Virus record (IMG/VR): IMGVR_UViG_3300027708_000012
Coordinates: 248,001-312,000 of that record
Length of the DNA stretch: 64,000 nucleotides
Reading direction: 5' to 3' (one strand)
Made by a program: the position numbers and the translations under genes. The notes under the pieces are model-generated. The model saw only the letters and a program-made list of their open reading frames with translations. It was not told where the DNA came from and searched no databases. Each line of letters begins with the position of its first letter. Position 1 is the first letter of the stretch. Of this stretch, positions 2,173 to 44,268 are shown piece by piece.

Positions 2173-2248
2173 AAAGTTCCTTTGCGTAGGATATTTATTA
2201 GAACAATTAAAGCTATTGATAAATACCGATATAGCTGAGGAAGATAGC

Positions 2249-3049: not shown

Positions 3050-3052
3050 AGT

Positions 3053-3610: not shown

Positions 3611-4185
3611 AAGATATTTACGATTTAACATCTATTTTATCATTAAATGATTTTCCTTGGATCGAGGTACAAAACGGTTTGATTGAAAGTGAAAACTTCC
3701 CGTCTGGATTTTATGGTATTAAAAAAGATGGTACCATGGGATATACTGTTTCTTTAACAGTTCAAAAAAATTCTGGTCCTTACCGTTGGTATATGTTAGA
3801 AATTTCTGAAGAGTGGGTAGACCATGAAAATAAAAAAAATTTCCCTTTGCTCTGTCAGTGGATAAAAAATTCCAATATATTTAAAAATACCGGAAGAATA
3901 ATATTTTTTGTCCAACCTCCTAATATTTCAACACCGGCTCATATAGATGAAGATTTATCTCGAGCACCAACAGAATATCAGAAGCCAAGGGAATTTATTT
4001 GGTTAACTCACCCAGACACCGGTAAGCAACTGTTTGTTAATAATACGCCTGCGCCATACGCCTGTTGGTTTAATAGCTACACGCTACATTCTTCAACTCC
4101 ATCAGAATTTATAACTTGGAGTTTGCGAATTGATGGAAATTTTACTGATAATTTTAAAAAGCTAATAGGATATGAAATATTATAA
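3607..4185 (+). CDS. 2OG-Fe(II) oxygenase-like protein (Asp/Asn beta-hydroxylase-like)
   Basis: PAHID...LHS motif. Confidence 0.5.
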   Translation: MKDIYDLTSILSLNDFPWIEVQNGLIESENFPSGFYGIKKDGTMGYTVSLTVQKNSGPYRWYMLEISEEWVDHENKKNFPLLCQWIKNSNIFKNTGRIIFFVQPPNISTPAHIDEDLSRAPTEYQKPREFIWLTHPDTGKQLFVNNTPAPYACWFNSYTLHSSTPSEFITWSLRIDGNFTDNFKKLIGYEIL

Positions 4186-4714
4186 AAAAATACCTTTAGA
4201 TTTTTTTGACATAATTGTTGCTAAATCACTGGCTTACATTCAGAAACATGATGACATTTACTATAGGAAAAAATCAGCATCTTTTTATCCTCTTAACACA
4301 ACTGAATTATTAACAGTTTGTCCAGAAATTAATCTAGCATTTGCTAATTATAATATTGTATGTAACTATGCCAGTGCGTATGTTACTTATAAAACTTCTG
4401 ATAATAATGTTCATATTGATGACTGGCATCATAAAGCTAGAATTAATTTACCAATTTTGAACTGTAAAAATACATATACTAATTTTTATAGTAATGTAAA
4501 AACTGAAAAGATAACAAACACGAGTACTGGGTTATCTCATTACAAAGTAATTAATACTGATTATATTTTAGATGATGCTGTAGAAATGGATAGTGCTACA
4601 GTTATTATGGTATCGCAAGGGCATAAAGTTGTCATGAACACCGATGTTGCTCCTAGGATTACACTTTCTTTAGGATTTGATAAAGATCCTGTTTTCATTA
4701 TTCATAATGAATAA
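4172..4714 (+). CDS. cupin / 2OG-Fe(II) oxygenase-like protein
   Basis: VHID..ARINLPILNC..GHKV, shared with 3053-3610. Confidence 0.55.
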   Translation: MKYYKKIPLDFFDIIVAKSLAYIQKHDDIYYRKKSASFYPLNTTELLTVCPEINLAFANYNIVCNYASAYVTYKTSDNNVHIDDWHHKARINLPILNCKNTYTNFYSNVKTEKITNTSTGLSHYKVINTDYILDDAVEMDSATVIMVSQGHKVVMNTDVAPRITLSLGFDKDPVFIIHNE

Positions 4715-5306
4715 AAGACGAGAAGGTTTGTTGACTTTCTTTTATAACTGATTCGTATTTGTTAATTTTAAAATTTCCGTAGTAAACAATTAATTGTTTG
4801 TGGTGTCCGTACCAAAAATCAGTTCCGTGTTTTGATTTATTATCCCAGTATAACCATGTATTGGATTCTTGGGGTAGTGTTTGATACAGAGTTTTATCTC
4901 CTGCCTTATAATAAAACGTAGGTTTGAAATTATTATCATATAGCATTGACCTAACGCTAATAGCAGGAACAGTGTGATCTTGATGAGGAATCACTGTAGC
5001 AAGACTGGACACTACTCGCATTACTTTAATTTCCATAGGAAATTCATCTAGGTTATCAAATAGACTAGGAAATAATTCAGGACAGTTTACATTAGTTGAC
5101 CTATACCCAGTCATTGCTTCTGGATCAGCGCCAGGCGCAACGTAGATATCAAAACCTCTCCAAAGTGCTCCGGTTTCATTATGATTTACTGCTACTTTAG
5201 GCACACGCTTACCTTCAGTTAGCCAAATTTTCCACCAAGCAGACCAATCTGTTGGTTGTATCTTAGGCCAAACTATAGGAGATGATATTATTTTTAAGTC
5301 GTTCAT
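4698..5306 (-). CDS. cupin / oxygenase-like hypothetical protein
   Basis: PHQD...KHG motif. Confidence 0.45.
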   Translation of the reverse strand: MNDLKIISSPIVWPKIQPTDWSAWWKIWLTEGKRVPKVAVNHNETGALWRGFDIYVAPGADPEAMTGYRSTNVNCPELFPSLFDNLDEFPMEIKVMRVVSSLATVIPHQDHTVPAISVRSMLYDNNFKPTFYYKAGDKTLYQTLPQESNTWLYWDNKSKHGTDFWYGHHKQLIVYYGNFKINKYESVIKESQQTFSSFIHYE

Positions 5307-5380
5307 AGCTTTATAAATATGTGTACATTAAATATTTATGCTGAAAATAAACTCTTAAAAATAATATAAAGGAATACACA

Positions 5381-6145
5381 ATGCATTTTGGATCTACTTC
5401 TAAAAATATCAATATATTCATGATGCTAGTTGCTATCTTTTCTATTTTAGGTTTATTTTATTTTCAATTTTCATTAATAAATTTTTCTATAACGCTTGTT
5501 AGTTTTTATATTTTAAATATACTAGGCAACTGGATGATGTTACATCGATATTATTCTCATCGTTCTTTTGAATTCAAGCATGATAGTGTGAGGAAATTTT
5601 TTACACTATTAAGTATATTAGCAGGAAGAGGAAGTCCTATTGGTTGGGTATATGTACATAGACAACATCATGCATACAGTGATACTGATAAAGATCCTCA
5701 CAGCCCTAAGATATTAGGATATTATAAATTATTTAGATCCAGACATCGAGAACAGGTAGAATCTGAAAAAATGAAAATCTTTTTAGTTAAAGATTTGATG
5801 AATAGCGAACAATTGTTTATACACAAATATTACATACTTTTTTTATTAGGATTTGGTTTGCTAGTAGGAGCATGCAGTATACAAGTACTGTACTTTGTTT
5901 GGATTTTGCCTTTATTTTTTGTGCATATGAGTCAGTTACATTTTAATTATTTTGGCCATATGTTTGGATACAGAACTTATCAAACAAAAGATGATAGCAG
6001 AAATAACAAATGGCTTTTTCCGTTTGTTCTTGGAGAAGCTTGGCACAACAACCATCATGCAAATCCAAAAGATATTTCTACAAAAAATAAACCTACAGAA
6101 TTTGATCCACTATCGTTCGTAATTAAATTTATTAAGGCGGATTAA
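5381..6145 (+). CDS. membrane fatty-acid desaturase
   Basis: His boxes HRYYSH, HRQHH, HNNHH. Confidence 0.9.
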   Translation: MHFGSTSKNINIFMMLVAIFSILGLFYFQFSLINFSITLVSFYILNILGNWMMLHRYYSHRSFEFKHDSVRKFFTLLSILAGRGSPIGWVYVHRQHHAYSDTDKDPHSPKILGYYKLFRSRHREQVESEKMKIFLVKDLMNSEQLFIHKYYILFLLGFGLLVGACSIQVLYFVWILPLFFVHMSQLHFNYFGHMFGYRTYQTKDDSRNNKWLFPFVLGEAWHNNHHANPKDISTKNKPTEFDPLSFVIKFIKAD

Positions 6146-6149
6146 TAAA

Positions 6150-6800
6150 TTATTCTTTTGGTATAATAGGTTTTGATTGTAATTCTTCTATAGAATACGG
6201 ACTAGTGTCTTTTTCTATCTCACTTACGTCGGTATAATCTTGCCTAAATTCTTCTTTAAGTATTCTATGTTTGACTGTCATAGCATCGGGTTTTGTTTGC
6301 TCACCTAGTAGTTTGTATAAGAATATCGATTCTGGAATAGTATTTTCTGGAATATGTGCGTAAGTGACTAAATTATACCTTCCTGTTTTAACCCAAGGAT
6401 TTTTTAACCATTGTCTTTGATAAACGTGTTCTAATCTTGATGCAATAACATAAAAATAATCCCAGTACTTTCTACGCTCTGCAATTTCGAAACAACCTTT
6501 CATTAAGTATCCCAATTCAGGTTTATCAAATGATAGTATATTATTGAATCGATTTGCCCACAATGAAGTGATAGTCCACAAGTTTATATTATCATATCTT
6601 GCAAAGCGTAAAGTGGCCCAACTTATTAATTTATCATCCTCATAATAACCCAATGCTAGTGCTCGCGGACTAGTTGTAAAATAATAGTAAAAACGTTCAT
6701 TTAACCGATCAGTTTTTGAAGTTCCGCCGACTCTTTCTTTAAGATTGGTCATGGCCATGGCTTCTCTAAAATCCATAATATTGAGAACTTTTAATTTCAT
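6150..6800 (-). CDS. hypothetical protein, possibly GNAT fold
   Basis: ORF; start moved to MKLKVLN (6800); function weakly inferred. Confidence 0.5.
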   Translation of the reverse strand: MKLKVLNIMDFREAMAMTNLKERVGGTSKTDRLNERFYYYFTTSPRALALGYYEDDKLISWATLRFARYDNINLWTITSLWANRFNNILSFDKPELGYLMKGCFEIAERRKYWDYFYVIASRLEHVYQRQWLKNPWVKTGRYNLVTYAHIPENTIPESIFLYKLLGEQTKPDAMTVKHRILKEEFRQDYTDVSEIEKDTSPYSIEELQSKPIIPKE

Positions 6801-6823
6801 AGGGTTGGGTATTCTATAAGTAT

Positions 6824-7429
6824 ATGTGTATGTATGCAATTTACGAATATAAAGATATCAATCGTGACTATTTTTTTGAATTTTTAAAAAAAGAGTTTCT
6901 AGAATATAAACACCCTGCCCGTGTGAACATATGGCACGACGACTGGCAAGAGTATCCAAATACACTTCCTTATCTATTAGAAATTACCAAAAGATTTAAT
7001 TCTGATAAAGGTAATTTTTTTATAATAACCGACGACGACAAAATTGTAGGTTGTAGCGGAGTGTATAAAAGTGACTTTAATGATAGAATAGCGATAGCTG
7101 GTGTTAGATCCTGGCTTAGTAAAAAATATAGAAATAAAAATTTGTTAAAAAAATTCTTATTTCCTAAACATAAAGAATGGGCGTTAAAAAATAATTGCGG
7201 GCAGATTGCTTTGTGTTTCAATGATTACAATAAAAACTTAATAGAGATTTTTAAAAGAACAAGGTTGTCTGAATCAGCCTTGAGAATTAAAAGTAGAGGT
7301 CCTGCTGATTTATTTTATACAGGTCTCCACGAAGTTGATGTTCCGGTAAATATACAATATACCCAACAATGGGTTATTTATGAAAAACTAGATTCTAAAT
7401 TTGATTTTGATTGGAAGATATTATTATGA
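6824..7429 (+). CDS. GNAT-like acetyltransferase
   Basis: IVGCSGV...RSWLSKKYRNKNL resembles the GNAT acetyl-CoA binding motif. Confidence 0.5.
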   Translation: MCMYAIYEYKDINRDYFFEFLKKEFLEYKHPARVNIWHDDWQEYPNTLPYLLEITKRFNSDKGNFFIITDDDKIVGCSGVYKSDFNDRIAIAGVRSWLSKKYRNKNLLKKFLFPKHKEWALKNNCGQIALCFNDYNKNLIEIFKRTRLSESALRIKSRGPADLFYTGLHEVDVPVNIQYTQQWVIYEKLDSKFDFDWKILL

Positions 7430-9124: not shown

Positions 9125-9730
9125 TTACATAGTAGGTCCGTTTCCACTCTTAAATCCTATTGTTCCGCCTTCTGCTTCGATGTTCTTTATAACATCTTCA
9201 AACAGAATTGGGGCAAAATCTGGTGTTTGTTCTACACAAACACAATGATAACGAACATCGTTTTCATCGCTGTATAAAACTTCGCCAGTTCTGGCATCTA
9301 CTCCACGAGCTTTTTTCACACGATTTGCGTGAGTATGTCCATGAATGTTAACGCCAAAACGACCCATTGAATCTGAGTGTAACGGAATGTGGCTAAGGAT
9401 CATACCGTTCATAACGTGATAAGCTCTAAGTTCTCTGAAGTACTGACGATACTCGTCGTCCCTAAAGATATCGTGATTACCACGAATTAAAACTTTGTCG
9501 CCGTTAAGTCTGGATAAGACTTTTAACGCTTTCCGATTAATAACAACATCGCCCAAATGGTAGACCTTGTCAGTGGGTTTTACCCGTTCGTTCCACGCCT
9601 TAATCATTGCTTCGTCCATTTCATCTGGATCAGTCCAGGGACGAAGTTTTGTAACACCGTCGTTACGTGTAAAGCGGCATACACCTGTGTGTCCAAAGTG
9701 CGTGTCGCTTACTAAGAATACACTTGGCAT
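9125..9730 (-). CDS. calcineurin-like metallophosphoesterase
   Basis: SDTHFGH, HLGD, GNHD, HGHTH motifs. Confidence 0.9.
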   Translation of the reverse strand: MPSVFLVSDTHFGHTGVCRFTRNDGVTKLRPWTDPDEMDEAMIKAWNERVKPTDKVYHLGDVVINRKALKVLSRLNGDKVLIRGNHDIFRDDEYRQYFRELRAYHVMNGMILSHIPLHSDSMGRFGVNIHGHTHANRVKKARGVDARTGEVLYSDENDVRYHCVCVEQTPDFAPILFEDVIKNIEAEGGTIGFKSGNGPTM

Positions 9731-9745
9731 ATTCGCCTCCTTTCA

Positions 9746-9919
9746 TTAATAAGTTTCTTTTACAATATTGTACTCGCTAGCTGGCCACTTGGCTTTAAAT
9801 TCATCAGTCTTAACATAATCGTTAAATGATTTGGCATCAAAAAACACTTTGTGAAACTCTGTTTTCATTGAACCTTTTTTGGTTACTGTTAAGTAAACCG
9901 ATTTTGCTTTGCCAGCCAT
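9746..9919 (-). CDS. small hypothetical protein (57 aa, MAGKAKSVYL...)
   Basis: Hand-translated ORF below track cutoff, with GAAAGG RBS and upstream sigma70 promoter. Confidence 0.65.
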   Translation of the reverse strand: MAGKAKSVYLTVTKKGSMKTEFHKVFFDAKSFNDYVKTDEFKAKWPASEYNIVKETY

Positions 9920-9945
9920 TGAGTACCTTTCTTGTTTAAGTAGTT

Positions 9946-9974
9946 ATTATACTACTTATTCCGCAATCAGTCAA
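9946..9974 (-). promoter_or_regulatory. sigma70 promoter
   Basis: TTGACT-17 nt-TATAAT. Confidence 0.75.
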
Positions 9975-10446
9975 CCGATCTAAATGTGCGCCAATCGTCG
10001 AGATTTGGCTTTTCATCTGCATCGTAAGTCCAACCTAACACTTTCATCATGCGATGCTTGACTAGCAAGTTAGGACTGCGGAAACGTTCTGTATCATCAA
10101 AGCCCATCATGACGCCTACTTCACAAACTGCACCCGAGCGACAAATACCAGCGTAGCAATGCACAACCACATTCATTCGATTAGCCAATGCATGTTGTAA
10201 CAACCTAACAAGCTCTGCGGCCTGTTCATGACTACATTTCATTTCTTCCTCAAGAACTTCGTCCTTTTCTTCTACATCCAAAAACTCAAAGTTGTGAACT
10301 TCTTTGAACTGATGTTTTGGAACAGGCCGCCAGCTTGCCGGATCGACAATGCTGATCAACATACTATTAGGGCCAGCATCGTGATGAAATCCAATTGGGA
10401 TATCACTTGCAGCTACGTTTTCAATCCAAGGCATTATACTCTCCAA
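9967..10446 (-). CDS. protein-tyrosine / dual-specificity phosphatase-like
   Basis: HCYAGICRS (CX5R) active-site loop. Confidence 0.8.
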   Translation of the reverse strand: MESIMPWIENVAASDIPIGFHHDAGPNSMLISIVDPASWRPVPKHQFKEVHNFEFLDVEEKDEVLEEEMKCSHEQAAELVRLLQHALANRMNVVVHCYAGICRSGAVCEVGVMMGFDDTERFRSPNLLVKHRMMKVLGWTYDADEKPNLDDWRTFRSVD

Positions 10447-10895
10447 ATTTCTTTGAAACCTTCATCTTCAGTTGGCATTTCAAAATTATCAATCATTCCT
10501 TGTACGATATCCCAAGGCACTTCTTTACCTGGCCGACTAGCCAAACGCTCTTTCAATATTTCAATATCAGGTGTAGTAAACACTACAGCGATATGCTCGT
10601 AGTCTGGAAGCATATTAAACTTACGAGTACGGCTAGCGATAGTAGTGCTAGTTTGATCCCAAAATATAGTATGACCCAAAGTACGGGCTCTCACAACCTG
10701 TTCAGCCATTAAATTAACTGCGGTAGGCATATAATCTTTAAACACTTCTGAATAAGTCTTACCTTGTGATCTTGCATAGTCCTCTACAAACGCATCGGTC
10801 GAAACTACTGTTAAGCCCAATGCCCAGTCTTGGTTTTTAATCCAAGTACTTTTACCTGCGCATGGAACTCCAATTAGTTGATAACACTTTGACAT
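10434..10895 (-). CDS. P-loop kinase (AAA_33 / polynucleotide-kinase-like)
   Basis: Walker A GVPCAGKST, STD, WDQT motifs. Confidence 0.8.
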   Translation of the reverse strand: MSKCYQLIGVPCAGKSTWIKNQDWALGLTVVSTDAFVEDYARSQGKTYSEVFKDYMPTAVNLMAEQVVRARTLGHTIFWDQTSTTIASRTRKFNMLPDYEHIAVVFTTPDIEILKERLASRPGKEVPWDIVQGMIDNFEMPTEDEGFKEIWRV

Positions 10896-11116: not shown

Positions 11117-11165
11117 ATTATAATGTCAAAAAAAAACCCTGTCAACTTCACAGCTAACAGGGTTT
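11117..11165 (-). terminator. intrinsic terminator overlapping a sigma70 promoter
   Basis: AACCCTGT/ACAGGGTT hairpin plus U9 after DUF2828; TTGACA(11140-11145)-17-TATAAT(11117-11122) embedded. Confidence 0.75.
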
Positions 11166-11190: not shown

Positions 11191-12603
11191 TTATAGTGCG
11201 TAACGATCACTCATTACAGTCTTCAGCATGATGCCTTCTGGAGTGAACTGATCCAAATCAGCGGCTAGCAAGCTAGTCATGATTGATGGACTGAATCCAC
11301 TTACCAATGCGACACCACTCTTGTCTGCCTTAACAGGTACGTTGTCTGAACTGTTTAGGTTCCAGAAAACAATCTGTGGCACAGTGTATCCTGCATCTGC
11401 AAACTTGCGTTCGATCATTTGCATTGCTGTGTCATCGTAATGAGCACATTGGTTAAACTGCATGTCTGACAAGATTAGCAACATGCCAGGCATGTCGCTA
11501 GCTGGTACTGAACCCTTAACCGCAACGTCTAGGATCTTGTCCATAGCCGCATGCAAGTTAGTGCTCATGTCCCAATCGCTACGAGACATTTGAGTAACCT
11601 TTTCAACAATGTTACCCTTTAGAGTAACAAGTTGTGGCTTGTCTGAGAAAGTCAAGAATGTGTCCTTGAACACGCCCTTGTTCTTATCTGCTAGGTACAA
11701 GCCCAAGCTGATTGAAATGTCCATGCAAGTTACATTAGAGTTCTTTCCTGCTGGGCAAGACATAGAACCACTAACGTCTACGATTGGCATGATGCTAGCA
11801 TCTCCAACGTAGTTTGGCAAGCTATCCCATTGTGCGATAACATGACTAGTTTCAGTCATATCCATCTTAGCACGATAGTGCCCAATCACACCCTTCAACA
11901 CATCATGTGGGAAGATTGCGCTGGCGTTAACCTTAACAGTCTTATCACCACTTACCAACTTGGCAACATACTCAGCGAACGCTGGGCTGTGACGGTTGAA
12001 AGCCTTCTTGTAGATTCGAGAAGCTACAGAAGGAACGTGACTGAAGTTGATGTTATCCCAATCTCCTGCACACATTTGGGTTTCAACAACCTTTGTAAGA
12101 GCTACAAGACTCTTACGGTATTGCTTTGGAGTCATGCCAAAGAAGGCACGAACTTCAGCGGCAATTTGCCCCTTACGAGGAGTCCACTTTGCGGCCAAAC
12201 CGTTATTAGCACGTAGGGCATCGCCCAACATGGTATAAGCGGCTGACTTTAGAACTGGGTCTTGGAAGACAAAGATGTCATCCCAACGACCAACTTCTGG
12301 GATCTTCTTTAGAAGAGCCAAAGCGGCGTCTGGGTCACGCTTTTCTAGATGAACTAGAATATCGCGGAACAGTTGACGTTCACCTGCACCACCGCGGACA
12401 TCACGTGCCCATTGTGCGATGCGTAGTGCAACGTCTTGGTTTTCCACATAAGCGGCTGTAAAGTCGCCTGTGATGTCCTTACCACGGCTTGCGCCGATAT
12501 TATAGAACAAGTCAACACAAGCCTTAGCTGTTGACTTACGTGCCTTCATACCGTTTTCGGTACGGGCTTCTTGATTTGCCACTGCATTTACAAATGCGTT
12601 CAT
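11191..12603 (-). CDS. DUF2828-family vWA protein (TROVE/Ro60-like architecture)
   Basis: Helical N-terminus with RDVRGGAGER and GRWDD; C-terminal vWA with MIDAS DVSGSM and LSDMQF. Confidence 0.8.
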   Translation of the reverse strand: MNAFVNAVANQEARTENGMKARKSTAKACVDLFYNIGASRGKDITGDFTAAYVENQDVALRIAQWARDVRGGAGERQLFRDILVHLEKRDPDAALALLKKIPEVGRWDDIFVFQDPVLKSAAYTMLGDALRANNGLAAKWTPRKGQIAAEVRAFFGMTPKQYRKSLVALTKVVETQMCAGDWDNINFSHVPSVASRIYKKAFNRHSPAFAEYVAKLVSGDKTVKVNASAIFPHDVLKGVIGHYRAKMDMTETSHVIAQWDSLPNYVGDASIMPIVDVSGSMSCPAGKNSNVTCMDISISLGLYLADKNKGVFKDTFLTFSDKPQLVTLKGNIVEKVTQMSRSDWDMSTNLHAAMDKILDVAVKGSVPASDMPGMLLILSDMQFNQCAHYDDTAMQMIERKFADAGYTVPQIVFWNLNSSDNVPVKADKSGVALVSGFSPSIMTSLLAADLDQFTPEGIMLKTVMSDRYAL

Positions 12604-12614
12604 GATATTTCCTT

Positions 12615-12671
12615 TACAGAATGTGTTGTTTTTCGATATAAGTGAAAAATTAAATTTGCTGTTAACATTCT
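12615..12671 (-). ncRNA. ACAGCAA element A (Ile-UAU anticodon-like loop)
   Basis: Stem AGAAUGU/ACAUUCU, UAACAGCAA, inner hairpin UUUUUC-A-CUUAUAU-C-GAAAAA; abuts the DUF2828 RBS. Confidence 0.65.
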
Positions 12672-12677
12672 AAATTT

Positions 12678-12834
12678 AACAGGATCGTTTTCTACTTTTT
12701 GTTTTTATCGAGGAGACTTGTCGAAACTCCTCTATCTAATCCTATCATTGCTAATAACCTTCAAAACCCTTTCAGGCTCCAGCTATTAGCATAAGATTAG
12801 CGTTCCATGTAATATGAATTGCTGTACCGATCCT
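12678..12834 (-). ncRNA. ACAGCAA element B (long form)
   Basis: Stem AGGAUCG/CGAUCCU, GUACAGCAA, inner stems GCUAAUAGC/GUUAUUAGC and GAGGAG/CUCCUC. Confidence 0.65.
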
Positions 12835-12868
12835 AAAACTCTTTAGCATTGTTACTTGCTATACGACT

Positions 12869-12897
12869 ATTATAGTACAGAATCAAGTCTGTGTCTA
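12869..12897 (-). promoter_or_regulatory. sigma70 promoter for elements B, A and DUF2828
   Basis: TAGACA-17-TATAAT. Confidence 0.7.
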
Positions 12898-12910
12898 TAC
12901 ATTTTGGTGA

Positions 12911-12963
12911 AACAGGATACATTTTTCTTCATTTGCAGTGAAATAAATTGCTGTTAGTATCCT
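12911..12963 (-). ncRNA. ACAGCAA element C (Cys-GCA anticodon-like loop)
   Basis: Stem AGGAUAC/GUAUCCU, UAACAGCAA, inner hairpin UUCA-CUGCAAA-UGAA. Confidence 0.65.
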
Positions 12964-13012
12964 AATTGGGGCGACACAGTTAAGTGAAGCTTCCACCAGC
13001 TAGTTTAGAAAA

Positions 13013-13861
13013 CTAGCAAACGTTTGGAGCAACGGGAGGGATTTGAACCCCCGGTTTTCCGGATTTGCAATCCGCTGCATTGGACCTCTCTGCCACCGTT
13101 GCATTAAATTTCGTCATATCAGCACAAGTGTACTTTTGATACGACTGTTCTAGTTCTTTAGGCATTGCTATATTTTCTATAACTGATGGATATTTGTTTC
13201 CTATCTCAATTGCAATGTCATAAAAACTTTTTGTTTTACCTGTACCCAAATTCCAAAGGCCCGATTCTTTAATTTCTAAAAATTTTAAATGTGCATTGAC
13301 TACTTCACTTACATGAATAAAATCTCTGTGATAGTTTCTGCTGTTGTCGAATAATGCAATTCGGCTTTTTATTTGGGCCTGTTTGGTAAACTTATAGTAC
13401 GGACTAGCCTGGTCGCCTTTATGTTCTTCGCCTTCTGGACCGTATACATTAAAGTAACGGAAACCTTGCACAACCGCACCCGCTGGATGATTTCGAACAT
13501 AACGTTCAAACAGATATTTGCTCCACGCATAAGGAGTACGTGGATCAACAGGCGCAGATTCTTTAAAGTCAGTATTCAACCCGTATACACTAGCACTACT
13601 GGAATATTGGAAATTAACTCCATATGTTTTGCAAGCATTGTACAATTGACAACTAAAGTCAAAATTTTGTCTGAATACTTTATCCACATCTCGCTCTGTT
13701 GTACTGCTAATCGCACCAATGTGTATAACCCAGTCTTGTTCCATTACACTAGGAAGCACTTCTCCCCATTCGTAAGTACTTACACAATGTCCAGCGGCTT
13801 CTAATGCTGTTAACATGTGACTACCAATAAAACCTTTATGACCAGTTAATAATATATTCAT
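13013..13861 (-). CDS. hldD: ADP-L-glycero-D-manno-heptose 6-epimerase-like (NAD-dependent epimerase)
   Basis: TGHKGFIG, YSSSASVYG, YAWSK, RYFNVYG; start at MNILLTG. Confidence 0.75.
   Translation of the reverse strand: MNILLTGHKGFIGSHMLTALEAAGHCVSTYEWGEVLPSVMEQDWVIHIGAISSTTERDVDKVFRQNFDFSCQLYNACKTYGVNFQYSSSASVYGLNTDFKESAPVDPRTPYAWSKYLFERYVRNHPAGAVVQGFRYFNVYGPEGEEHKGDQASPYYKFTKQAQIKSRIALFDNSRNYHRDFIHVSEVVNAHLKFLEIKESGLWNLGTGKTKSFYDIAIEIGNKYPSVIENIAMPKELEQSYQKYTCADMTKFNATVAERSNAADCKSGKPGVQIPPVAPNVC
13025..13102 (-). tRNA. tRNA-Cys(GCA)
   Basis: Cloverleaf, loop TTGCAAA, encoded CCA; lies inside the 3' end of hldD. Confidence 0.9.
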
Positions 13862-14616
13862 ATTTCTGTTATTGAAGGAGAGTAACAACCAAAATGTTGT
13901 ACTGTAATTGCGCTTGCTCTTACAGCAAATTTAATAGCTTGCTCAATATTTTTAGTATTTAAATATTCAACGGTTAATGCTGCAAGAAATGTATCTCCTG
14001 CACCAGTAACATCACTTACTTCTACTATAGGTGCGGGACAAGTAAAGTCATGATGTATTGCACTTGCGCCGTGAGCACCATGTGTAACAATTAATCCAGA
14101 ACATTCACTAGTAATTTTACTATACTCTAGATCATTAATCTTTACCCAAGCACCTTGCATACGTTCTAAGTCTGTTTTCTTTGTATCAATAAAAATAGGA
14201 ATACTTAAAGAAATTAATTCTTCTATTAGTTCGTAGCTAACTGTTCCTTTATTGTAATCGCTGACTACAACAGCATCATATACATCGGGTATTGCTGTTT
14301 CAAATGTGATAGGAGTTGATTTAATATCGTTATCTATTCGAACAATCTGTTGTTTACTACGTGCATCAATAATTCTAGTTTTAGTACTTGTTTCGCCGTG
14401 CAGATAGCTAACTTCACAACCTAATGCTTTCAAGTTGTTGTAGACATTGCCGGCCATGCCGTCACGCTCTTCTGTGTAAGTAGGAACAAATACCGGAACA
14501 GGAGCTTCTGGACTTAGTCTATCTATTGTACCGTATTGATAAATGTCTTTACAGTTATCGCCTATCAGCAATATCTTGAATTGTTTTTGTTGTTGAGTAA
14601 TCGCCGACTCTGTCAT
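13858..14616 (-). CDS. PfkB-family heptose-7-phosphate kinase (HldE kinase domain)
   Basis: RLSPEAPVPV, SDYNKG, DVTGAGDTF. Confidence 0.85.
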   Translation of the reverse strand: MTESAITQQQKQFKILLIGDNCKDIYQYGTIDRLSPEAPVPVFVPTYTEERDGMAGNVYNNLKALGCEVSYLHGETSTKTRIIDARSKQQIVRIDNDIKSTPITFETAIPDVYDAVVVSDYNKGTVSYELIEELISLSIPIFIDTKKTDLERMQGAWVKINDLEYSKITSECSGLIVTHGAHGASAIHHDFTCPAPIVEVSDVTGAGDTFLAALTVEYLNTKNIEQAIKFAVRASAITVQHFGCYSPSITEI

Positions 14617-14956
14617 AAAATATCACTTGATTAACATGTTCTTTTGCAACTATACTTTTGCCTCTCCAGTCACTACCTTTAACCATAATGTCTGGTTTGT
14701 ACAATTTAATTAATTCTACTAACTCTTCTTTGGTGTTAAAAACTTTAACATAGTCTACACATTTTAGACTATTCAACATAAACATCCTATCTGTTTGGTT
14801 GTTTATGGGTCGTGTAGGACCTTTAAGTTGTTGAACACGTTCGTCAGAATCAATACAAACTAAAAGATAATCGCCTTGACTTTTTGCATAATGTAACATT
14901 TCTAAATGTCCACGATGAAGTATGTCAAATGTTCCGTTTACTATTACTTTGGTCAT
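14555..14956 (-). CDS. heptose-1-phosphate adenylyltransferase (HldE C-terminal domain, cytidylyltransferase fold)
   Basis: GTFDILHRGH, KGPTRPIN, KGSDW, YSTT. Confidence 0.85.
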   Translation of the reverse strand: MTKVIVNGTFDILHRGHLEMLHYAKSQGDYLLVCIDSDERVQQLKGPTRPINNQTDRMFMLNSLKCVDYVKVFNTKEELVELIKLYKPDIMVKGSDWRGKSIVAKEHVNQVIFYDRVGDYSTTKTIQDIADRR

Positions 14957-25212: not shown

Positions 25213-25453
25213 ATAAGGATAACAACTAAGATGCGCCACCATCGTTATTGGCGCCATTCACCTGTTTATACAAGGTCGACCAGGACTCGGTACGTCACTT
25301 GGGATTCATCCAGTTGATACGCCACCTGTATACCTCCACCGTTCGACGGCGATAAGTCGGGAATCGAACCCGCAACCTTTTACTACCTCGGTCCTTCGAA
25401 GAAACCTTATTAGCATGACTTCACTTGCTGACACTTAATTGTTATTCTTATGG
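25211..25453 (-). ncRNA. ~243-nt stem-enclosed RNA between tRNA-Lys and tRNA-Met
   Basis: 19/20-bp basal stem; internal T-arm-like GCGGG-UUCGAUU-CCCG. Confidence 0.55.
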
Positions 25454-25526
25454 TAGGACTGCCCGGACTCGAACCGGGAATTGACGGATTAAAAGTCCGC
25501 TGTGATTACCATTTCACCACAATCCC
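25451..25526 (-). tRNA. tRNA-Lys(TTT)
   Basis: Cloverleaf, loop CTTTTAA, CCA. Confidence 0.95.
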
Positions 25527-25717: not shown

Positions 25718-25781
25718 AACAGGATGCATTTTTACTGGTTAGATTAAAAGTCTAGTGTAATAAATTTGCTGTTAGCATCCT
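25718..25781 (-). ncRNA. ACAGCAA element D (Lys-UUU anticodon-like loop)
   Basis: Stem AGGAUGC/GCAUCCU, UAACAGCAA, inner hairpin UAGA-CUUUUAA-UCUA. Confidence 0.7.
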
Positions 25782-25785
25782 AAAC

Positions 25786-25877
25786 TGGTACCCCCGGCGG
25801 GAATCGAACCCACATTAACCAATTATCTGTTGCATACGGGATATAAATCCGCTGTTTTACCATTAAACTACAGGGGC
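25786..25877 (-). tRNA. tRNA-Ile(TAT) with 22-nt variable region
   Basis: Acceptor GCCCCTG/CGGGGGT, loop TTTATAT, A31:C39 mismatch, CCA. Confidence 0.75.
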
Positions 25878-27651: not shown

Positions 27652-27737
27652 TGGTGGAGTATCCTGGGATCGAACCAGGCGTGCCATTACGACGGCGGAT
27701 TTACAGTCCACTGCATCACCATTGATGCTTCTACTCC
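27652..27737 (-). tRNA. tRNA-Tyr(GTA)
   Basis: Long variable arm, loop CTGTAAA, CCA. Confidence 0.9.
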
Positions 27738-30364: not shown

Positions 30365-30452
30365 TTCTATTTCCTTTTTTTAAATGACTCGATGTCATTG
30401 ACTATTATATATGCCTTTGCATCAGATAGTCAAGAATATTTAACCCAATGTA

Positions 30453-35048: not shown

Positions 35049-35055
35049 CCATAAA

Positions 35056-42171: not shown

Positions 42172-44268
42172 TTACTCTCCTTGCTTATATTGCATGTCTA
42201 CCATTCTTTTATGTAGGCTATCGCTACTCATTTGTCGCAGTACTTGTACGTTGTCTATGACTTTTTGGCCTTTATAAACTTCTTTAGGTTCATAAAAAGC
42301 CGTATCTCTTAATACAAACGAATATGCTTCAAATCCTCTTGGTTGTGTAGCCATTGATGCAAGATCAACACCTGCGGCTAGATCGTTTGGTTGTACATTT
42401 CTATTAACTGTACTTGTCTGTGACTGTATATTTTCTTGCATTAACTCAAAACGCTGTTGCATCATCATTTCTGACAATGGATTGCCAGCCTTACCCATGC
42501 CGCCAAAACTAGCAACTTGCATTGGTGGTGTTTCTACTTCCATAATACGTTCTTGTAATCGTGGCTGATATACAGGTGCGGTTTGTGTAGGTGCTGGACT
42601 TATACTAGATAAATTTAATGACCCTAGTGGATTGTAGGCAAACGGATTTCGACTAACTGTTAATCCTGTACCACTACTGGCTTGTTGTTGGGATTCTGTT
42701 GCTGCAGGTGCTGTAGGTTTTAACATAGCTACTGATGTTGACTGTGTTTCTTGTTGTGCTTGTTGCGGTGGTGTATATGCAGCTTGTTGAATCTGTACAA
42801 CACTTCCATTAGATTGTTGTTGTACTTCTTGTTGTACTTCTTGTTGTACTTGTTGTACTACACGACTAGTCTGTTGCTGTTGCGTAGTAGTCTGTTGCTG
42901 TTGTTGCGTATTTTGACTTGTTTGAATTGCGGTCTGCTGGCTAGCTTGTGTATTTTGACTGGAGAACTGTGCGGCTGCTGTGGCACTGTTAGCACTCATA
43001 TCTTGATTCATACTGATTGCAAGATTACTAGCGGCTTGTGAACTTTGTTGGGTATTTTCAAATGCTTTGGCAGCATTTTGTACGGCTGATTGTTGTATTG
43101 CTTGTTCTTTGGCCTGTGCTGATTTGACCACACTCATTGCTAATTTGCTAGGGCCACCTCCGCTGGTTGCAGAGCCTGCTTGTTGTGGGCCTGCCTGACT
43201 TGGTCCAGCACTTGGTGGAGGTGCAGATTGTGCTACTTGAGGAGGACCGCCGGCTGGTTGAGGTTGTGTTGGTGCAGGCCCAGCTTGTTGCGGGCTAGGC
43301 TGTGCCGGATTATCTTGTGCTACCGCAGGATTTTGATTTGGATCTTGCCCCGGTTGCTGAGTTGGTAGTCCTTGTTGTGCAGGTGCTTGCTGTGCAGGTT
43401 GTTGTGCTTGCTGTTGTGGACTTGCTTGAGCTAATGCAGGTGCCGCATCGGCTACAGCAGGGGGTGCCGCCGCTGGTGCAGGTGATGTATAGTTCATTGC
43501 AGGTACAAATGAAGTAGCACTTGCATTTGAAACTGTAGATCCTAGTATAGAATTTTTAACAGTAGCTAAAGCGTATCCTGGGCAAGTAGGACTTGATAAT
43601 GGGTCGTTTATACACGGATCGGGCTTTACTGTATATTTCAAGCTAAAATTAACATTAATAATTTCTGGACCATAATTGCCAGCCCAATAATTATTGTCTC
43701 GGCCTACAAAGCCTACCTGTGCATTACTAAAGCTAGTTGCTGGTACAGGACTAGAAAAAGTTTCACTGAAGTTAAAGTTAGTCCAGTTATATTTCCTATT
43801 TGTTTGACTAGTATAATCATAGTTTGCTGCTAGTCCTCCACCGCTATTATAGAACTTAACATACGCACCTAAATAATCTTGACGTCCATCATCCCAGCCG
43901 TTGCCGTTCTTAGCAGTAAACCCGAAATTAAATCCTCCAAGTTGTACACCACTTCCGCCTATAGACAATGCCTTGTTTATACTGACAATTTGATTTAAGT
44001 CTGTAGTGCCGTATGAATAGTTAATAACACCATCTGGTCTTATACTTGGTTTAGGACCACAGTTACCAGCCTGACCGGCCTGGAAGCACAGTGTATTAAC
44101 ATAGACACCGTTGTTCCAAATGCTAGTCGTATCTGTAGGCGCAGTACCGTTATTAATTAAATTACCGGTAGTAGCGTCTACTTGAGCATTAGTGGAAGCC
44201 GAATATACGATAAGCAATAACGCCCAGTATACTACCGATACCAACTTTCTTATAAGTGTCATCTTCAC
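42172..44268 (-). CDS. secreted Gln/Pro/Ala-rich protein
   Basis: Signal peptide, globular N-domain, long QPA-rich linker. Confidence 0.75.
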   Translation of the reverse strand: MKMTLIRKLVSVVYWALLLIVYSASTNAQVDATTGNLINNGTAPTDTTSIWNNGVYVNTLCFQAGQAGNCGPKPSIRPDGVINYSYGTTDLNQIVSINKALSIGGSGVQLGGFNFGFTAKNGNGWDDGRQDYLGAYVKFYNSGGGLAANYDYTSQTNRKYNWTNFNFSETFSSPVPATSFSNAQVGFVGRDNNYWAGNYGPEIINVNFSLKYTVKPDPCINDPLSSPTCPGYALATVKNSILGSTVSNASATSFVPAMNYTSPAPAAAPPAVADAAPALAQASPQQQAQQPAQQAPAQQGLPTQQPGQDPNQNPAVAQDNPAQPSPQQAGPAPTQPQPAGGPPQVAQSAPPPSAGPSQAGPQQAGSATSGGGPSKLAMSVVKSAQAKEQAIQQSAVQNAAKAFENTQQSSQAASNLAISMNQDMSANSATAAAQFSSQNTQASQQTAIQTSQNTQQQQQTTTQQQQTSRVVQQVQQEVQQEVQQQSNGSVVQIQQAAYTPPQQAQQETQSTSVAMLKPTAPAATESQQQASSGTGLTVSRNPFAYNPLGSLNLSSISPAPTQTAPVYQPRLQERIMEVETPPMQVASFGGMGKAGNPLSEMMMQQRFELMQENIQSQTSTVNRNVQPNDLAAGVDLASMATQPRGFEAYSFVLRDTAFYEPKEVYKGQKVIDNVQVLRQMSSDSLHKRMVDMQYKQGE

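What the first reader, a model, noticed from the sequence alone, without database searches (positions are those of the whole stretch)
12615..12963. Repeated covarying ncRNA beside the Ro60-like gene that displays tRNA anticodon loops
Seen: three copies here (A 12615-12671, B 12678-12834, C 12911-12963) and a fourth at 25718-25781 share one design on the minus strand: 7-bp closing stem, NWACAGCAA, variable interior, 3' GUW. Stems covary (AGAAUGU/ACAUUCU, AGGAUCG/CGAUCCU, AGGAUAC/GUAUCCU, AGGAUGC/GCAUCCU). Three interiors are hairpins with 7-nt loops that copy this phage's anticodon loops: C has A-CUGCAAA-U (tRNA-Cys A-UUGCAAA-U); D has GA-CUUUUAA-UC (identical to tRNA-Lys UUU); A has A-CUUAUAU-C, including the A31:C39 mismatch of tRNA-Ile UAU. 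Inference: a Y-RNA-like scaffold, bound by the DUF2828 protein through ACAGCAA, presenting anticodon decoys to host anticodon nucleases (PrrC cuts tRNA-Lys UUU) or luring them to a repair complex. I do not recognise the motif as a named family.
Basis: partly seen in the sequence, partly recalled or inferred. Interest (0 to 1): 0.92.

Follow-up and report, generated by a model that had tools for sequence, protein, structure and literature searches.

The report
Anticodon-displaying RNAs of Ro60-like phage protein
Four small RNA genes in a jumbo phage share a constant docking stem and motif beside a Ro60-like gene and carry look-alikes of tRNA anticodon loops; the same undescribed design sits beside this gene family in many phages and prophages.

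Summary
Four minus-strand elements (A, B, C, D) share a 7-bp covarying terminal helix, an invariant CAGCAA just after its 5' strand, and a G after its 3' strand. The adjacent gene (DUF2828+DUF7788) folds like Ro60. The same RNA module lies on the gene strand beside this gene in 10 diverse phages, 80 close relatives and 64 of 80 bacterial or archaeal genome loci, and is absent from the phage T5 tRNA region. About 30% of the variable interiors carry 7-nt loops with anticodon-loop signatures, eight times the shuffle expectation, and Lys-UUU is the commonest. Longer relatives carry permuted, YrlA-like tRNA bodies. In other loci the module is capped and inserted into tRNA-like genes between the D arm and the anticodon arm. 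So the RNAs are most likely Y-RNA-like partners of a Ro60-like protein whose cargo mimics tRNA. Protein binding and a decoy role against anticodon nucleases are inferred, not shown. Rfam has no family for it. The nearest is the Dictyostelium Class I RNA, which has the same stem, UUACAGCAA motif and CUGU layout but scores below threshold. I judge it a new variant of the Ro60/Y RNA kind, of high interest.

The parts
12615..12672 (-). Element A. Short RNA: helix AGAAUGU/ACAUUCU, UAACAGCAA, hairpin UUUUC(A)-CUUAUAU-(C)GAAAA (Ile-UAU-like loop), 3' GUA. It ends 12 nt before the ATG of the DUF2828 gene.
   Evidence: (51.3 bits). In 70 orthologues the module is invariant or changes compensatorily, and the loop columns are the most variable.
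12675..12837 (-). Element B. Long version: the same helix (AGGAUCG/CGAUCCU), GUACAGCAA and 3' GUU, with a 3-hairpin interior of about 130 nt and no anticodon-like loop.
   Evidence: MFE -47.6, z -5.2; 8 relatives, 4 pairs with compensatory change in the long hairpin.
12911..12964 (-). Element C. Short RNA: helix AGGAUAC/GUAUCCU, UAACAGCAA, hairpin UUUCA-CUGCAAA-UGAAG (Cys-GCA-like loop), 3' GUU. It lies about 60 nt downstream of tRNA-Cys and upstream of the promoter-like site of the B-A-gene unit.
   Evidence: (49.9 bits). Relatives have CUUUA-CUGCAAA-UAAAG, where the stem changes and the loop is kept.
25718..25782 (-). Element D. Short RNA inside the tRNA array, 13 kb from the gene: helix AGGAUGC/GCAUCCU, UAACAGCAA, hairpin UAGA-CUUUUAA-UCUA (Lys-UUU loop), 3' GUU.
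   Evidence: 46.7 bits; 11/11 match to the tRNA-Lys(UUU) loop plus flanks. Relatives L028 and L041 keep CUUUUAA with different stems.
11191..12603 (-). Gene for the 470-aa DUF2828+DUF7788 protein: a Ro60-like helical-repeat ring plus a vWA domain with DxSxS (D276, S278, S280). It is the presumed protein partner.
   Evidence: Pfam PF11443 1.8e-26 and PF25043 5.7e-50. PHROG 850 'RNA-binding protein'. Invariant residues. Model. Foldseek hits to Ro60 structures 9kop, 9l5y, 1yvp, 2i91, 2nvo.
12869..12897 (-). Promoter-like site TAGACA-17-TATAAT between C and B. It would start a transcript carrying B, A and the gene.
   Evidence: 11 of 12 matches. This is a consensus scan only.
11134..11165 (-). Terminator-like hairpin (14 pairs plus a T run) directly after the gene, overlapped by a perfect TTGACA-17-TATAAT promoter for the next unit.
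13025..13102 (-). tRNA-Cys(GCA), whose anticodon loop C resembles. It sits immediately upstream of C.
25451..25526 (-). tRNA-Lys(UUU), whose anticodon loop and two flanking pairs D copies exactly.
25786..25877 (-). tRNA-Ile(UAU), 92 nt, with an A31:C39 mismatch. It is the model for A's loop and sits immediately upstream of D.
9125..10895 (-). Next transcription unit on the same strand: AAA_33 P-loop kinase (10434-10895), DSP/PTP-type phosphatase (9967-10446) and calcineurin-like phosphoesterase (9125-9730). Together they look like an RNA end-healing set.
   Evidence: Pfam hits. Their function is inferred from domain families only.

Best explanation
A, B, C and D are genes for small non-coding RNAs that serve as the RNA subunits of a phage ribonucleoprotein built on the DUF2828/DUF7788 protein, a structural homologue of Ro60.

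Each RNA has two parts.
1. A constant docking module. This is a 7-bp terminal helix of free sequence whose 5' strand runs straight into single-stranded N-W-A-CAGCAA and whose 3' strand is followed by G-U.
2. A variable cargo that imitates part or all of a tRNA. In A, C and D the cargo is a bare anticodon stem-loop look-alike (Ile-UAU, Cys-GCA, Lys-UUU). In relatives it can be an anticodon arm plus T arm, or a circularly permuted whole tRNA body with a capped acceptor stem, as in YrlA. In a third arrangement the module is closed by a G-NNA-type loop and inserted into a tRNA-like gene between the D arm and the anticodon arm.

Favoured mechanism (inferred). The protein ring holds the module and stabilises the RNA, so the RNP displays an anticodon-loop bait. 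Host enzymes that read anticodon loops are then diverted or trapped. The main candidates are defence nucleases that cut tRNA anticodon loops, such as the PrrC, RloC, PARIS AriB, PtuAB and VapC types. Co-encoded end-healing or sealing enzymes and the phage's own tRNA array would restore translation capacity.

How likely:
- The RNAs are functional partners of the DUF2828 protein: about 0.8.
- The cargo is a tRNA or anticodon-arm mimic under selection: about 0.75.
- The bait or decoy role against anticodon-directed defence: about 0.35.
For: SHOWN (computationally)
1. The module is real and strand-specific. In 29 copies from 10 phages all 7 helix pairs covary, and CAGCA and the 3' G are invariant. 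An interior-blind pattern finds 153 copies on the gene strand against 6 on the other strand and 5-8 in shuffles. The base after the helix is G in 145 of 153 although this was not required.
2. Co-occurrence with the gene.
- Covariance-model hits number 33 in 10 diverse phages, 104 in 80 close relatives and 81 in 80 bacterial or archaeal genome loci. All are on the gene strand.
- Of the 81 hits in the genome loci, 75 lie upstream (median 197 nt from the start codon) and 6 lie within 360 nt downstream.
- With open and capped forms counted together, 64 of 80 loci carry the module: 121 and 36 sites on the gene strand against 3 and 0 on the other strand.
- The phage T5 tRNA region (25 tRNAs, no DUF2828 in the 49 kb examined) has no hit.
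3. The protein is Ro60-like, with a vWA DxSxS motif.
4. Anticodon mimicry.
- In 121 non-redundant elements that played no part in forming the hypothesis, 37 have a hairpin with a 7-nt YUNNNRN loop (T-loops excluded) against 4.5 +/- 2.0 in shuffles. CUNNNRA occurs 24 times against 0.6 +/- 0.8.
- Among 51 such loops (6 of them T-loops), position 34 is A in only 4 although the interiors are 39% A (p 5e-7). 46 of 51 triplets are standard bacterial anticodons against 54% expected (p 3e-8). UUU is the commonest.
- CUUUUAA recurs with different stems in unrelated phages.
5. Long forms align to the YrlA T arm, capped acceptor stem and D arm (37.5 bits, E 1e-6 for the 561-nt stretch searched).
6. Among relatives with 85-100% protein identity, the loop is the most variable part of copy A while the module is fixed.
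7. Context. The gene abuts tRNA arrays in Felix O1, Listeria, Campylobacter, Enterococcus and Bacillus phages and in this window. RNA repair genes lie nearby: RtcB, RNA ligase 2, and a kinase plus phosphatases here. Phage LeBron has a polynucleotide kinase and an RNA ligase (PMC13148394).

FROM A PAPER
In Bas63, a Felix O1-like phage, the Ro60-like gp130 lies just upstream of the tRNA array. Deleting it sensitises the phage to the ppl defence system (PMC11482910).
Against: - There are no expression, processing or binding data of any kind. The mature ends are unknown.
- About two thirds of family members lack a canonical anticodon-like loop, and B has none.
- In many orthologues of A the loop has 9 nt or lacks U33, so loop variability could be relaxed constraint rather than an arms race.
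- A 7-nt YUNR loop is also the generic U-turn loop of antisense RNAs.
- B and A lie in the mRNA leader. In Vibrio phage XZ1 the single copy sequesters the Shine-Dalgarno sequence and the AUG, which fits autoregulation.
- The one defence system with experimental evidence (ppl) is not known to be an anticodon nuclease.
- Mimics would lack the wobble-base modifications that some anticodon nucleases need (my own knowledge of PrrC).
- I did not verify by sequence that Bas63 gp130 is a DUF2828 orthologue.
Confidence: 0.55

Rival explanations
1. Y-RNA-like tether or gate rather than bait. The RNA docks on the Ro60-like ring, and its tRNA-like cargo recruits host tRNA-binding or RNA-decay enzymes (PNPase, RNase P/Z, CCA-adding enzyme, modification enzymes). 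The ring would then handle damaged or host RNAs. This parallels the Ro60-Y RNA-PNPase machine, or the rsr-yrlA-rtcBA operon, where the system assists tRNA repair.
For: - The protein has a Ro60 fold.
- Long forms resemble YrlA.
- Thermus phage phiLo Ro60 with its Y-like RNAs assembles with host PNPase (PMC12135203).
- Repair genes lie nearby.
- Capped modules sit inside natural-topology tRNA-like genes. This looks more like holding a tRNA body than offering a decoy.
Against: - The minimal forms (A, C, D) keep only the anticodon arm, which is a poor handle for PNPase, RNase P/Z or the CCA enzyme.
- Conservation of specific anticodon triplets, with Lys-UUU dominant, is not explained by generic recruitment.
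- No test was made here.
Confidence: 0.25
2. Cis-acting leader elements. The protein binds the module in its own mRNA leader and represses or times its own translation. The tandem copies are operator repeats, and the interiors are spacers.
For: - B and A lie between a promoter-like site and the ATG, and A ends 12 nt before the ATG.
- 75 of 81 hits are upstream of the gene, 48 of them within 300 nt.
- In Vibrio phage XZ1, and possibly L132, the 3' strand of the helix overlaps the start codon.
Against: - D lies 13 kb away inside the tRNA array.
- The Felix O1, Bacillus, Staphylococcus and Mycobacterium phage copies lie downstream of the gene or among tRNAs.
- Interiors carry selected tRNA-like structure.
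- Capped copies sit inside tRNA-like genes.
- An autoregulatory role may be secondary for the gene-proximal copy only.
Confidence: 0.1
3. Decayed tRNA genes or processing punctuation of tRNA operons, with no function tied to the DUF2828 protein.
For: - The elements lie in or next to tRNA arrays and carry pieces of tRNA.
- Some records annotate them as tRNA-OTHER or pseudo-tRNA.
Against: - An invariant non-tRNA motif (CAGCAA) and a covarying helix are kept across phages of Proteobacteria, Firmicutes, Actinobacteria, Cyanobacteria, Chloroflexi and an archaeal MAG.
- The module is present next to the gene where no tRNA array is nearby, in the Staphylococcus and Mycobacterium phages.
- It is absent from the T5 tRNA array.
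Confidence: 0.03

Closest known systems
Bacterial Y RNAs of the YrlA type with Ro60/Rsr (Rfam RF02553; rsr-yrlBA-rtcBA operon; Chen et al. 2014, PMC4201824)
   Same: - Small RNAs are encoded beside a Ro60-fold ring protein.
- They are modular, with a protein-binding stem plus a tRNA-like domain (T arm, D arm, capped acceptor stem).
- They are linked to RNA repair genes.
- They also occur in phages.
- A long family member (L089 2720-2838) aligns to the YrlA core.
   Different: - The protein is not TROVE by sequence. It matches PF11443 and PF25043, and a sequence search of PDB finds nothing.
- The docking module is unrelated to the Ro60-binding helix, and the window copies give no YrlA or Y_RNA hit.
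- The cargo can shrink to a bare anticodon arm, which YrlA lacks.
- A capped form inserted into tRNA-like genes exists.
Class I RNAs of dictyostelid social amoebae (Rfam RF01414; Kjellin et al. 2021, PMC7919456)
   Same: - Length is about 50-65 nt, with a 6-7 bp terminal helix of variable sequence.
- The 5' G pairs with the C of a 3' CUGU.
- UUACAGCAA follows the 5' strand directly. C6, C9, A10 and A11, which are invariant in Dictyostelia, are invariant or nearly so (A11, at least 90%) in phage.
- The interior is variable, AU-rich and A-rich at its 3' side.
- Genes occur in clusters.
- RF01414 is the best non-tRNA Rfam match for A, C, D and for copies in two other phages, Aeromonas 4_4572 and Listeria LP-048.
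   Different: - All scores (17-30 bits) are below the gathering score of 41.5.
- Dictyostelium has one more base between the helix and the motif.
- Class I genes are eukaryotic nuclear genes with a DUSE promoter.
- Class I interiors do not look like anticodon arms (by eye).
- The known binder is the RRM protein Rnp1A.
- No link to DUF2828 is reported, and I could not test for one.
Thermus phage phiLo Ro60 with Yrl1/Yrl2 (PMC12135203)
   Same: - It is a phage-encoded Ro60-fold protein, and the best structural match to this protein (E 2.5e-8, TM 0.57).
- Its small RNAs are encoded just upstream of the gene.
   Different: - It is a true TROVE protein.
- Its RNAs were picked out by a CGAA motif, not by a helix plus CAGCAA.
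- No anticodon display is reported.
Phage answers to anticodon nucleases: T4 Pnkp/Rnl1 repair of PrrC-cut tRNA-Lys, and phage tRNA arrays as replacements (established knowledge; T4 repair is cited in PMC13148394)
   Same: - The genomic company is the same: large tRNA arrays, a kinase, phosphoesterases and RNA ligases.
- tRNA-Lys(UUU), the classic target, is the loop most often displayed.
   Different: - Those systems repair or replace tRNAs.
- A protein-held anticodon-arm mimic has not been described for them.
Stable small RNAs in phage tRNA clusters (T5 RNA1/2/3, RNAI/III/IV, annotated 'tRNA-like stable RNA with unknown functions'; T4 species 1 and 2 RNAs, the latter from my own knowledge)
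   Same: They are small non-tRNA RNAs interspersed with phage tRNA genes.
   Different: The T5 region has no match to the module (best 14.2 bits, E 1.5).

Membership tests
Dictyostelid Class I RNA (RF01414) | 42-65 nt RNA whose 5' and 3' ends form a short helix of variable sequence | tested here: met
   A, C and D measure 54, 50 and 61 nt helix to helix, each with a 7-bp helix. The helix covaries. The mature ends are not known.
Dictyostelid Class I RNA (RF01414) | 11-nt motif CCUUACAGCAA directly after the 5' helix strand, with U3, C6, C9, A10 and A11 conserved | tested here: met
   The window copies have U(A/U)ACAGCAA or GUACAGCAA. C6, A7, G8, C9 and A10 are invariant and A11 is at least 90% in 29 copies. 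The spacer is one base shorter than in Dictyostelium.
Dictyostelid Class I RNA (RF01414) | 5' G paired with the C of a 3'-terminal CUGU | tested here: met
   The layout is (A)G-GAUAC...GUAUC-C-UGU in B, C and D, and CUGUA in A. The G after the helix is invariant. Compare.
Dictyostelid Class I RNA (RF01414) | Score at or above the Rfam gathering threshold (41.5 bits) | tested here: not met
   A scores 25.5, C 21.9 and D 17.1 bits. Copies in other phages score 23-30 bits.
Dictyostelid Class I RNA (RF01414) | Nuclear gene of Dictyostelia with a DUSE promoter about 60 nt upstream | tested here: not met
   The source is a phage contig (IMG/VR UViG, 345 kb). The promoter-like sites are of the bacterial type.
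Dictyostelid Class I RNA (RF01414) | Bound by Rnp1A/CIBP | not testable with these tools
   This needs biochemistry.
Y RNA / YrlA (RF00019, RF02553) | Encoded next to a Ro60 (TROVE) gene | tested here: inconclusive
   The neighbouring protein has the Ro60 fold, but it belongs to PF11443/PF25043 rather than TROVE.
Y RNA / YrlA (RF00019, RF02553) | Conserved Ro60-binding helix and family sequence signature (match to the Rfam model) | tested here: not met
   No Y_RNA or YrlA match up to E = 10 was found over 12300-13300 or around D.
Y RNA / YrlA (RF00019, RF02553) | tRNA-like domain with T arm, D arm and capped acceptor stem | tested here: not met
   This is not met by A-D. A, C and D have an anticodon-arm-like hairpin only, and B has none. 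It is met by long relatives (L089 at 37.5 bits, L028, L033, L088, Felix O1 copy 4), though below the gathering score of 69.
tRNA (RF00005) | Cloverleaf recognised by ARAGORN or the Rfam tRNA model | tested here: not met
   Neither tool calls A-D.
Ro60/TROVE protein (for the adjacent gene) | Helical-repeat ring plus vWA domain with a metal-site motif | tested here: met
   The model has pLDDT 89.9 and pTM 0.88. Full-length Foldseek matches to Ro60 structures have TM 0.5-0.62. DxSxS is invariant.
Ro60/TROVE protein (for the adjacent gene) | Sequence match to TROVE or to solved Ro60 proteins | tested here: not met
   Pfam gives only PF11443 and PF25043. phmmer against PDB finds nothing at E up to 10. 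Identity in the structural alignments is 12-17%.

The most novel reading that the evidence does not exclude
The helix + UWACAGCAA + CUGU module is the recognition element of the whole DUF2828/DUF7788 protein family, in eukaryotes as well as phages. On this reading the abundant Class I RNAs of Dictyostelium are the Y-RNA-like partners of a eukaryotic DUF2828 protein. Those RNAs have been thought unique to social amoebae, and their function is unknown. Phages would use the same ancient RNP as a plug-in display system, in which the cargo (anticodon arm, half tRNA or whole tRNA) is swapped to match whichever tRNA the host's defence nucleases attack.
Probability: 0.3. Interest if true: 0.95.

Novelty: new variant of a known kind. 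Interest (0 to 1): 0.85.

Why it matters
DUF2828/DUF7788 is a very large uncharacterised family. A single-sequence search found 6,322 clusters at 50% identity and homologues in 711 phage records. These include Felix O1-like, Listeria P100-like, Campylobacter and Staphylococcus phages, groups that I know (own knowledge, not checked here) are used in typing, biocontrol or therapy.

Assigning the family an RNA partner with a simple, searchable signature would have several consequences.
- It turns a 'domain of unknown function' into a testable RNP.
- It explains intergenic sequences and 'pseudo-tRNAs' in many phage genomes.
- It extends Ro60/Y RNA biology to a second protein family.
- It suggests a new kind of counter-defence: protein-held mimics of the part of a tRNA that defence nucleases attack, with a swappable specificity loop.
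- It gives a concrete hypothesis for the 20-year-old puzzle of what Dictyostelium Class I RNAs bind and do.
- The module could also serve as a portable RNA tag for a known protein fold.

Tried and rejected
- Rfam at gathering thresholds finds only tRNAs and the tmRNA.
- Megablast of the region against GenBank phages matches only the tRNA-Cys, so the phage itself is not in that collection.
- A fifth window candidate (43838..43744, E 0.32) was rejected because it lies inside a 698-aa ORF.
- My first loose pattern detector gave many coding-region false positives and was replaced.
- The covariance model might have biased the loop statistics, because its seed contained CUUUUAA-type loops. I repeated the test with a detector that ignores the interior, and the result held.
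- T-loops (UUCGAAU) fit the YUNNNRN pattern and were excluded.
- The sequence search of PDB was empty.
- The search for homologous proteins listed only near relatives, so it could not show eukaryotic members.
- I tried to find a Dictyostelium DUF2828 protein in the proteome files attached to the Class I paper. This was inconclusive because the files are truncated and the only VSGSM hits are unrelated proteins.
- Avesson et al. 2011, which lists the proteins pulled down with a Class I RNA, is not held.
- Literature searches for DUF2828, PF11443, UCP015417, ACAGCAA+Ro60, Dictyostelium+Ro60, and anticodon nuclease+decoy found no description of this RNA.
- I did not find Bas63 among the 60 sampled rows of 260 Felix O1-like records, so its gp130 is equated with this family by description only.
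- No RNA ligase was found among the 10 ORFs of at least 180 aa that I scanned in window 432-7429.
Full report
**What is in the window.** The window is part of a 345-kb jumbo-phage contig, IMG/VR UViG_3300027708_000012. It carries 28 ARAGORN-called tRNA genes, one tRNA-Tyr that ARAGORN missed, and a permuted tmRNA, all on the minus strand. Each has the following parts.
- A 7-bp terminal helix: AGAAUGU/ACAUUCU, AGGAUCG/CGAUCCU, AGGAUAC/GUAUCCU and AGGAUGC/GCAUCCU.
- N-W-ACAGCAA immediately after the 5' strand of the helix.
- A variable interior that ends A-rich.
- G-U-W after the 3' strand of the helix.

ACAGCAAWTT occurs 4 times against 0.82 expected.

A promoter-like site at 12897..12869 lies between C and B. 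A strong terminator-like hairpin at 11165..11134 follows the gene. B, A and the 470-aa gene (11191-12603) therefore look like one transcription unit. C follows tRNA-Cys in the preceding unit. D sits 13 kb away, between tRNA-Ile(UAU) and the two tRNA-Lys genes.

**The protein.** The gene product matches PF11443 (DUF2828) and PF25043 (DUF7788) and PHROG 850, 'RNA-binding protein'. It has no sequence relative in PDB. An AlphaFold model built on 36 diverse homologues is confident (pLDDT 89.9, pTM 0.88). Its 11 best Foldseek matches in PDB are all Ro60 proteins, aligned over their full length. They are Thermus phage phiLo Ro60 (E 2.5e-8), Xenopus and human Ro60, and Deinococcus Rsr. A DxSxS metal-site motif of the vWA domain is invariant. 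'Ro60-like' is therefore justified by fold, not by sequence. The family is very large: 6,322 clusters at 50% identity and homologues in 711 phage records.

**The RNA module travels with the gene.** By eye and with a simple detector I found the same design beside the gene in ten phages:
- Synechococcus phage BUCT-ZZ01
- Salmonella phage Felix O1
- Listeria phage LP-048
- Vibrio phage XZ1
- Mycobacterium phage Lumos
- Campylobacter phage CP39
- Staphylococcus phage S-CoN_Ph5
- Enterococcus phage PEF1
- Bacillus phage Thrax1
- Aeromonas phage 4_4572

In an alignment of 29 short copies all seven helix pairs covary, and C-A-G-C-A and the G after the helix are invariant. Pairing was a selection criterion for these copies. 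The informative point is therefore the variety of complementary helices next to a fixed motif.

A covariance model (R1) built from this alignment gave these results.
- 33 hits in the ten phages
- 104 hits in 80 close relatives of the window phage
- 81 hits in 80 loci from bacterial and archaeal genome assemblies, including Chloroflexi, Clostridia, Izemoplasma, Treponema and a Woesearchaeota MAG

Every one of these 218 hits is on the strand of the gene. In the genome-assembly loci, 75 hits lie upstream (median 197 nt) and 6 lie within 360 nt downstream. A pattern that ignores the interior finds 153 copies on the gene strand, 6 on the other strand and 5-8 in shuffles. The phage T5 tRNA region, with 25 tRNAs and several stable RNAs of unknown function, gives nothing (best 14.2 bits, E 1.5).

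**The interior imitates tRNA, to different degrees.**
- Bare anticodon-arm look-alikes. In two data sets, hairpins with a 7-nt loop are about twice as frequent as in shuffled interiors. Loops of the form Y-U-N-N-N-R-N are eight to eleven times as frequent. Model R1 could favour such loops, so I repeated the test on the independent loci with the interior-blind detector. Of 121 non-redundant elements, 37 have YUNNNRN loops (T-loops excluded) against 4.5 +/- 2.0 expected. CUNNNRA occurs 24 times against 0.6 +/- 0.8. None of 500 shuffles reached either value.
- The triplets behave like anticodons. A at position 34 occurs in 4 of 51 loops although the interiors are 39% A. 46 of 51 triplets are standard bacterial anticodons against 54% expected. 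UUU (Lys) is the commonest, followed, once the T-loop triplet CGA is set aside, by GCU, GCA and UGA. CUUUUAA recurs in unrelated phages with different stems, which argues for selection on the loop itself.
- In the window, D equals the tRNA-Lys(UUU) loop plus two flanking pairs (11 of 11). A and C match Ile-UAU and Cys-GCA except at position 32.
- Some relatives carry an anticodon arm plus a T arm (L123, L135, L160, L161).
- Others carry a complete, circularly permuted tRNA body in the order anticodon arm, variable region, T arm, capped acceptor hairpin, D arm (L028, L033, L088). Felix O1 copy 4 likewise carries T-arm-like and D-arm-like segments. One such element aligns to the Rfam YrlA model over the T arm, capped acceptor and D arm (37.5 bits).
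- Window element B is a different long form. It has three hairpins and no tRNA features, is conserved, and shows compensatory changes.

About two thirds of all elements have no canonical anticodon-like loop. The mimicry is a strong tendency, not a rule.

**A third topology, found in passing.** In cyanophage BUCT-ZZ01 two tRNA-like genes carry an identical insert between the D arm and the anticodon arm. The insert reads CAUUCU-GUAA-AGAAUG-AAUUCUGCAA. This is the module with its two ends joined by a loop, and its helix has the same sequence as that of window copy A.

A scan for this capped form (hairpin, loop starting with G, three bases, CAGCAA) finds 36 strict sites on the gene strand and none on the other strand. 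34 of the 36 are followed by a T-loop. The sites are concentrated in the Clostridia-type loci where R1 had found nothing. L149 has five such tagged tRNA-like genes in tandem just upstream of the gene. ARAGORN does not call them.

Counting both forms, 64 of 80 loci carry the module, and most of the rest have truncated flanks. The conserved G after the helix in the open form corresponds to the first base of the capping loop. This suggests that the helix, the G and CAGCAA together form the recognised unit. In every topology CAGCAA leads into the anticodon arm.

**Evolution among close relatives.** In 70 orthologues of copy A (38 distinct), the module is invariant or changes compensatorily (AGAAUGU/ACAUUCU, AGAAUGC/GCAUUCU, AGGUUAU/AUAACCU). 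The hairpin persists, and the loop columns are the most variable. Loops seen there include UAU, CAU, AUA, UCA, UGA and GCA types. This fits rapid retargeting. It equally fits relaxed constraint on that copy.

**Context.**
- The gene abuts tRNA arrays in most phages examined.
- RNA repair genes recur nearby: RtcB in Listeria phage LP-048 and RNA ligase 2 in the Aeromonas phage.
- Metallophosphoesterases lie nearby in Lumos and Thrax1.
- A P-loop kinase, a DSP-type phosphatase and a metallophosphoesterase lie just downstream in this window.
- In mycobacteriophage LeBron the Ro-like protein, a polynucleotide kinase and an RNA ligase are all present (PMC13148394).
- In Bas63, a Felix O1-like phage, the Ro60-like gp130 lies upstream of the tRNA array, and its deletion sensitises the phage to the ppl defence system. 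The authors guessed that some 'tRNAs' there might be Y RNAs (PMC11482910).

**Most likely mechanism.**

Shown here:
- a conserved, strand-specific RNA module linked to a Ro60-fold protein
- cargo that mimics tRNA parts, with anticodon-like loops under apparent selection

Inferred:
- the RNAs are cut out of tRNA-containing or leader transcripts
- the protein binds the helix, CAGCAA and G
- the RNP displays an anticodon-arm bait to proteins that read anticodon loops

I favour diversion or trapping of host anticodon-directed defence nucleases. Co-encoded healing enzymes and the phage tRNA set would then restore function. I put this at about 0.35, within about 0.8 for 'functional RNA partner of the protein'.

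The main rival (0.25) is a YrlA-like tether that recruits host RNA-processing or repair enzymes. The capped, natural-topology tRNA-like forms fit this at least as well. Autoregulation of the gene by the leader copies (0.1) may coexist with either. The Vibrio phage copy encloses the Shine-Dalgarno sequence and the AUG.

**Comparison with known families.** No Rfam 15 family reaches threshold. The best non-tRNA match for A, C and D, and for copies in two other phages (Aeromonas 4_4572 and Listeria LP-048), is the Dictyostelium Class I RNA, at 17-30 bits against a gathering score of 41.5. The resemblance is in the module. The published Class I features are these (PMC7919456):
- length of 42-65 nt
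- a short terminal helix
- CCUUACAGCAA right after the 5' strand, with U3, C6, C9, A10 and A11 conserved
- a 5' G paired to the C of a 3' CUGU
- a variable interior
- clustered genes

All of these are mirrored in the phage RNAs, with a spacer one base shorter. Class I RNAs were reported as unique to Dictyostelia and their function is unknown. I could not test whether Dictyostelium has a DUF2828 protein. That Pfam describes PF11443 as a family of eukaryotes and viruses is my recollection only. The five papers that mention DUF2828 concern plants and a tardigrade. Membership in RF01414 is therefore not claimed, and a shared protein partner is the most novel reading left open.

Against YrlA and Y RNA, the logic is the same (a Ro60-fold partner, tRNA mimicry, repair neighbours). 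The docking module and the protein family are different, and the minimal anticodon-arm cargo and the capped-in-tRNA form are new.

**Novelty and verdict.** Searches of the literature library found no description of an RNA partner for DUF2828 or of this motif. I rate it a new variant of a known kind, the Ro60/Y RNA-type RNP with tRNA mimicry. It is widespread and has an unusually clean signature.

Noticed in passing
L002 4581-4697 and 4709-4828; L149 3080-3830; L090 2524-2640; many of L122-L169: The docking module also occurs closed by a G-NNA-type loop and inserted into natural-topology tRNA-like genes between the D arm and the anticodon arm. With strict criteria there are 36 sites on the gene strand and 0 on the other strand, and 34 of 36 are followed by a T-loop. 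ARAGORN misses these genes, and Rfam calls one of them a 117-nt tRNA. They explain most loci where the covariance model found nothing.
   Followed up: partly
window 27655-27737 (-): A class II tRNA-Tyr(GUA) with encoded CCA is found by the Rfam tRNA model (33.4 bits) but not by ARAGORN, so the array holds 29 tRNA genes.
   Followed up: partly
window 25786-25877 (-): tRNA-Ile(UAU) is 92 nt long. A 24-nt variable region can form a small hairpin with the loop CAGAUAA, and the anticodon stem has an A31:C39 mismatch.
   Followed up: no
window 35055-35497 (-): A permuted (two-piece type) tmRNA gene: RF04321 at 125.9 bits, and a tag peptide predicted by ARAGORN.
   Followed up: no
L003 2963-3009 (Vibrio phage XZ1): This phage has a single copy of the module. 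Its interior holds the Shine-Dalgarno sequence, and the 3' strand of its helix includes the ATG of the DUF2828 gene. This suggests translational autoregulation in that lineage.
   Followed up: no
L004 1469-2020 (Listeria phage LP-048): A ROOL RNA match (90 bits, just under the gathering score of 99.1) lies about 650 nt upstream of the three module copies. RtcB lies about 1.3 kb downstream of the DUF2828 gene.
   Followed up: no
window 11117-11165 (-): A 14-bp terminator-like hairpin is overlapped by a perfect TTGACA-17-TATAAT promoter. This is a tight unit boundary between the DUF2828 gene and the kinase/phosphatase genes.
   Followed up: no
window 432-6145 and 13013-14956: Auxiliary-metabolism-type genes are present: a Rieske protein, two fatty-acid desaturases, a QueC-like PP-loop protein, an NAD-dependent epimerase, a PfkB-family kinase and a cytidylyltransferase.
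   Followed up: no
L171 (phage T5, record positions 30284-41566): T5 annotates eight stable RNAs of unknown function among its tRNAs. None matches the module, so they are a different kind of tRNA-cluster RNA.
   Followed up: partly
L090 554-4987 (Aeromonas phage 4_4572): At least nine module copies occur in one phage, eight of them short open copies. Their loops include Lys-UUU, Met-CAU and Ser-GCU types. This is the richest array seen.
   Followed up: partly
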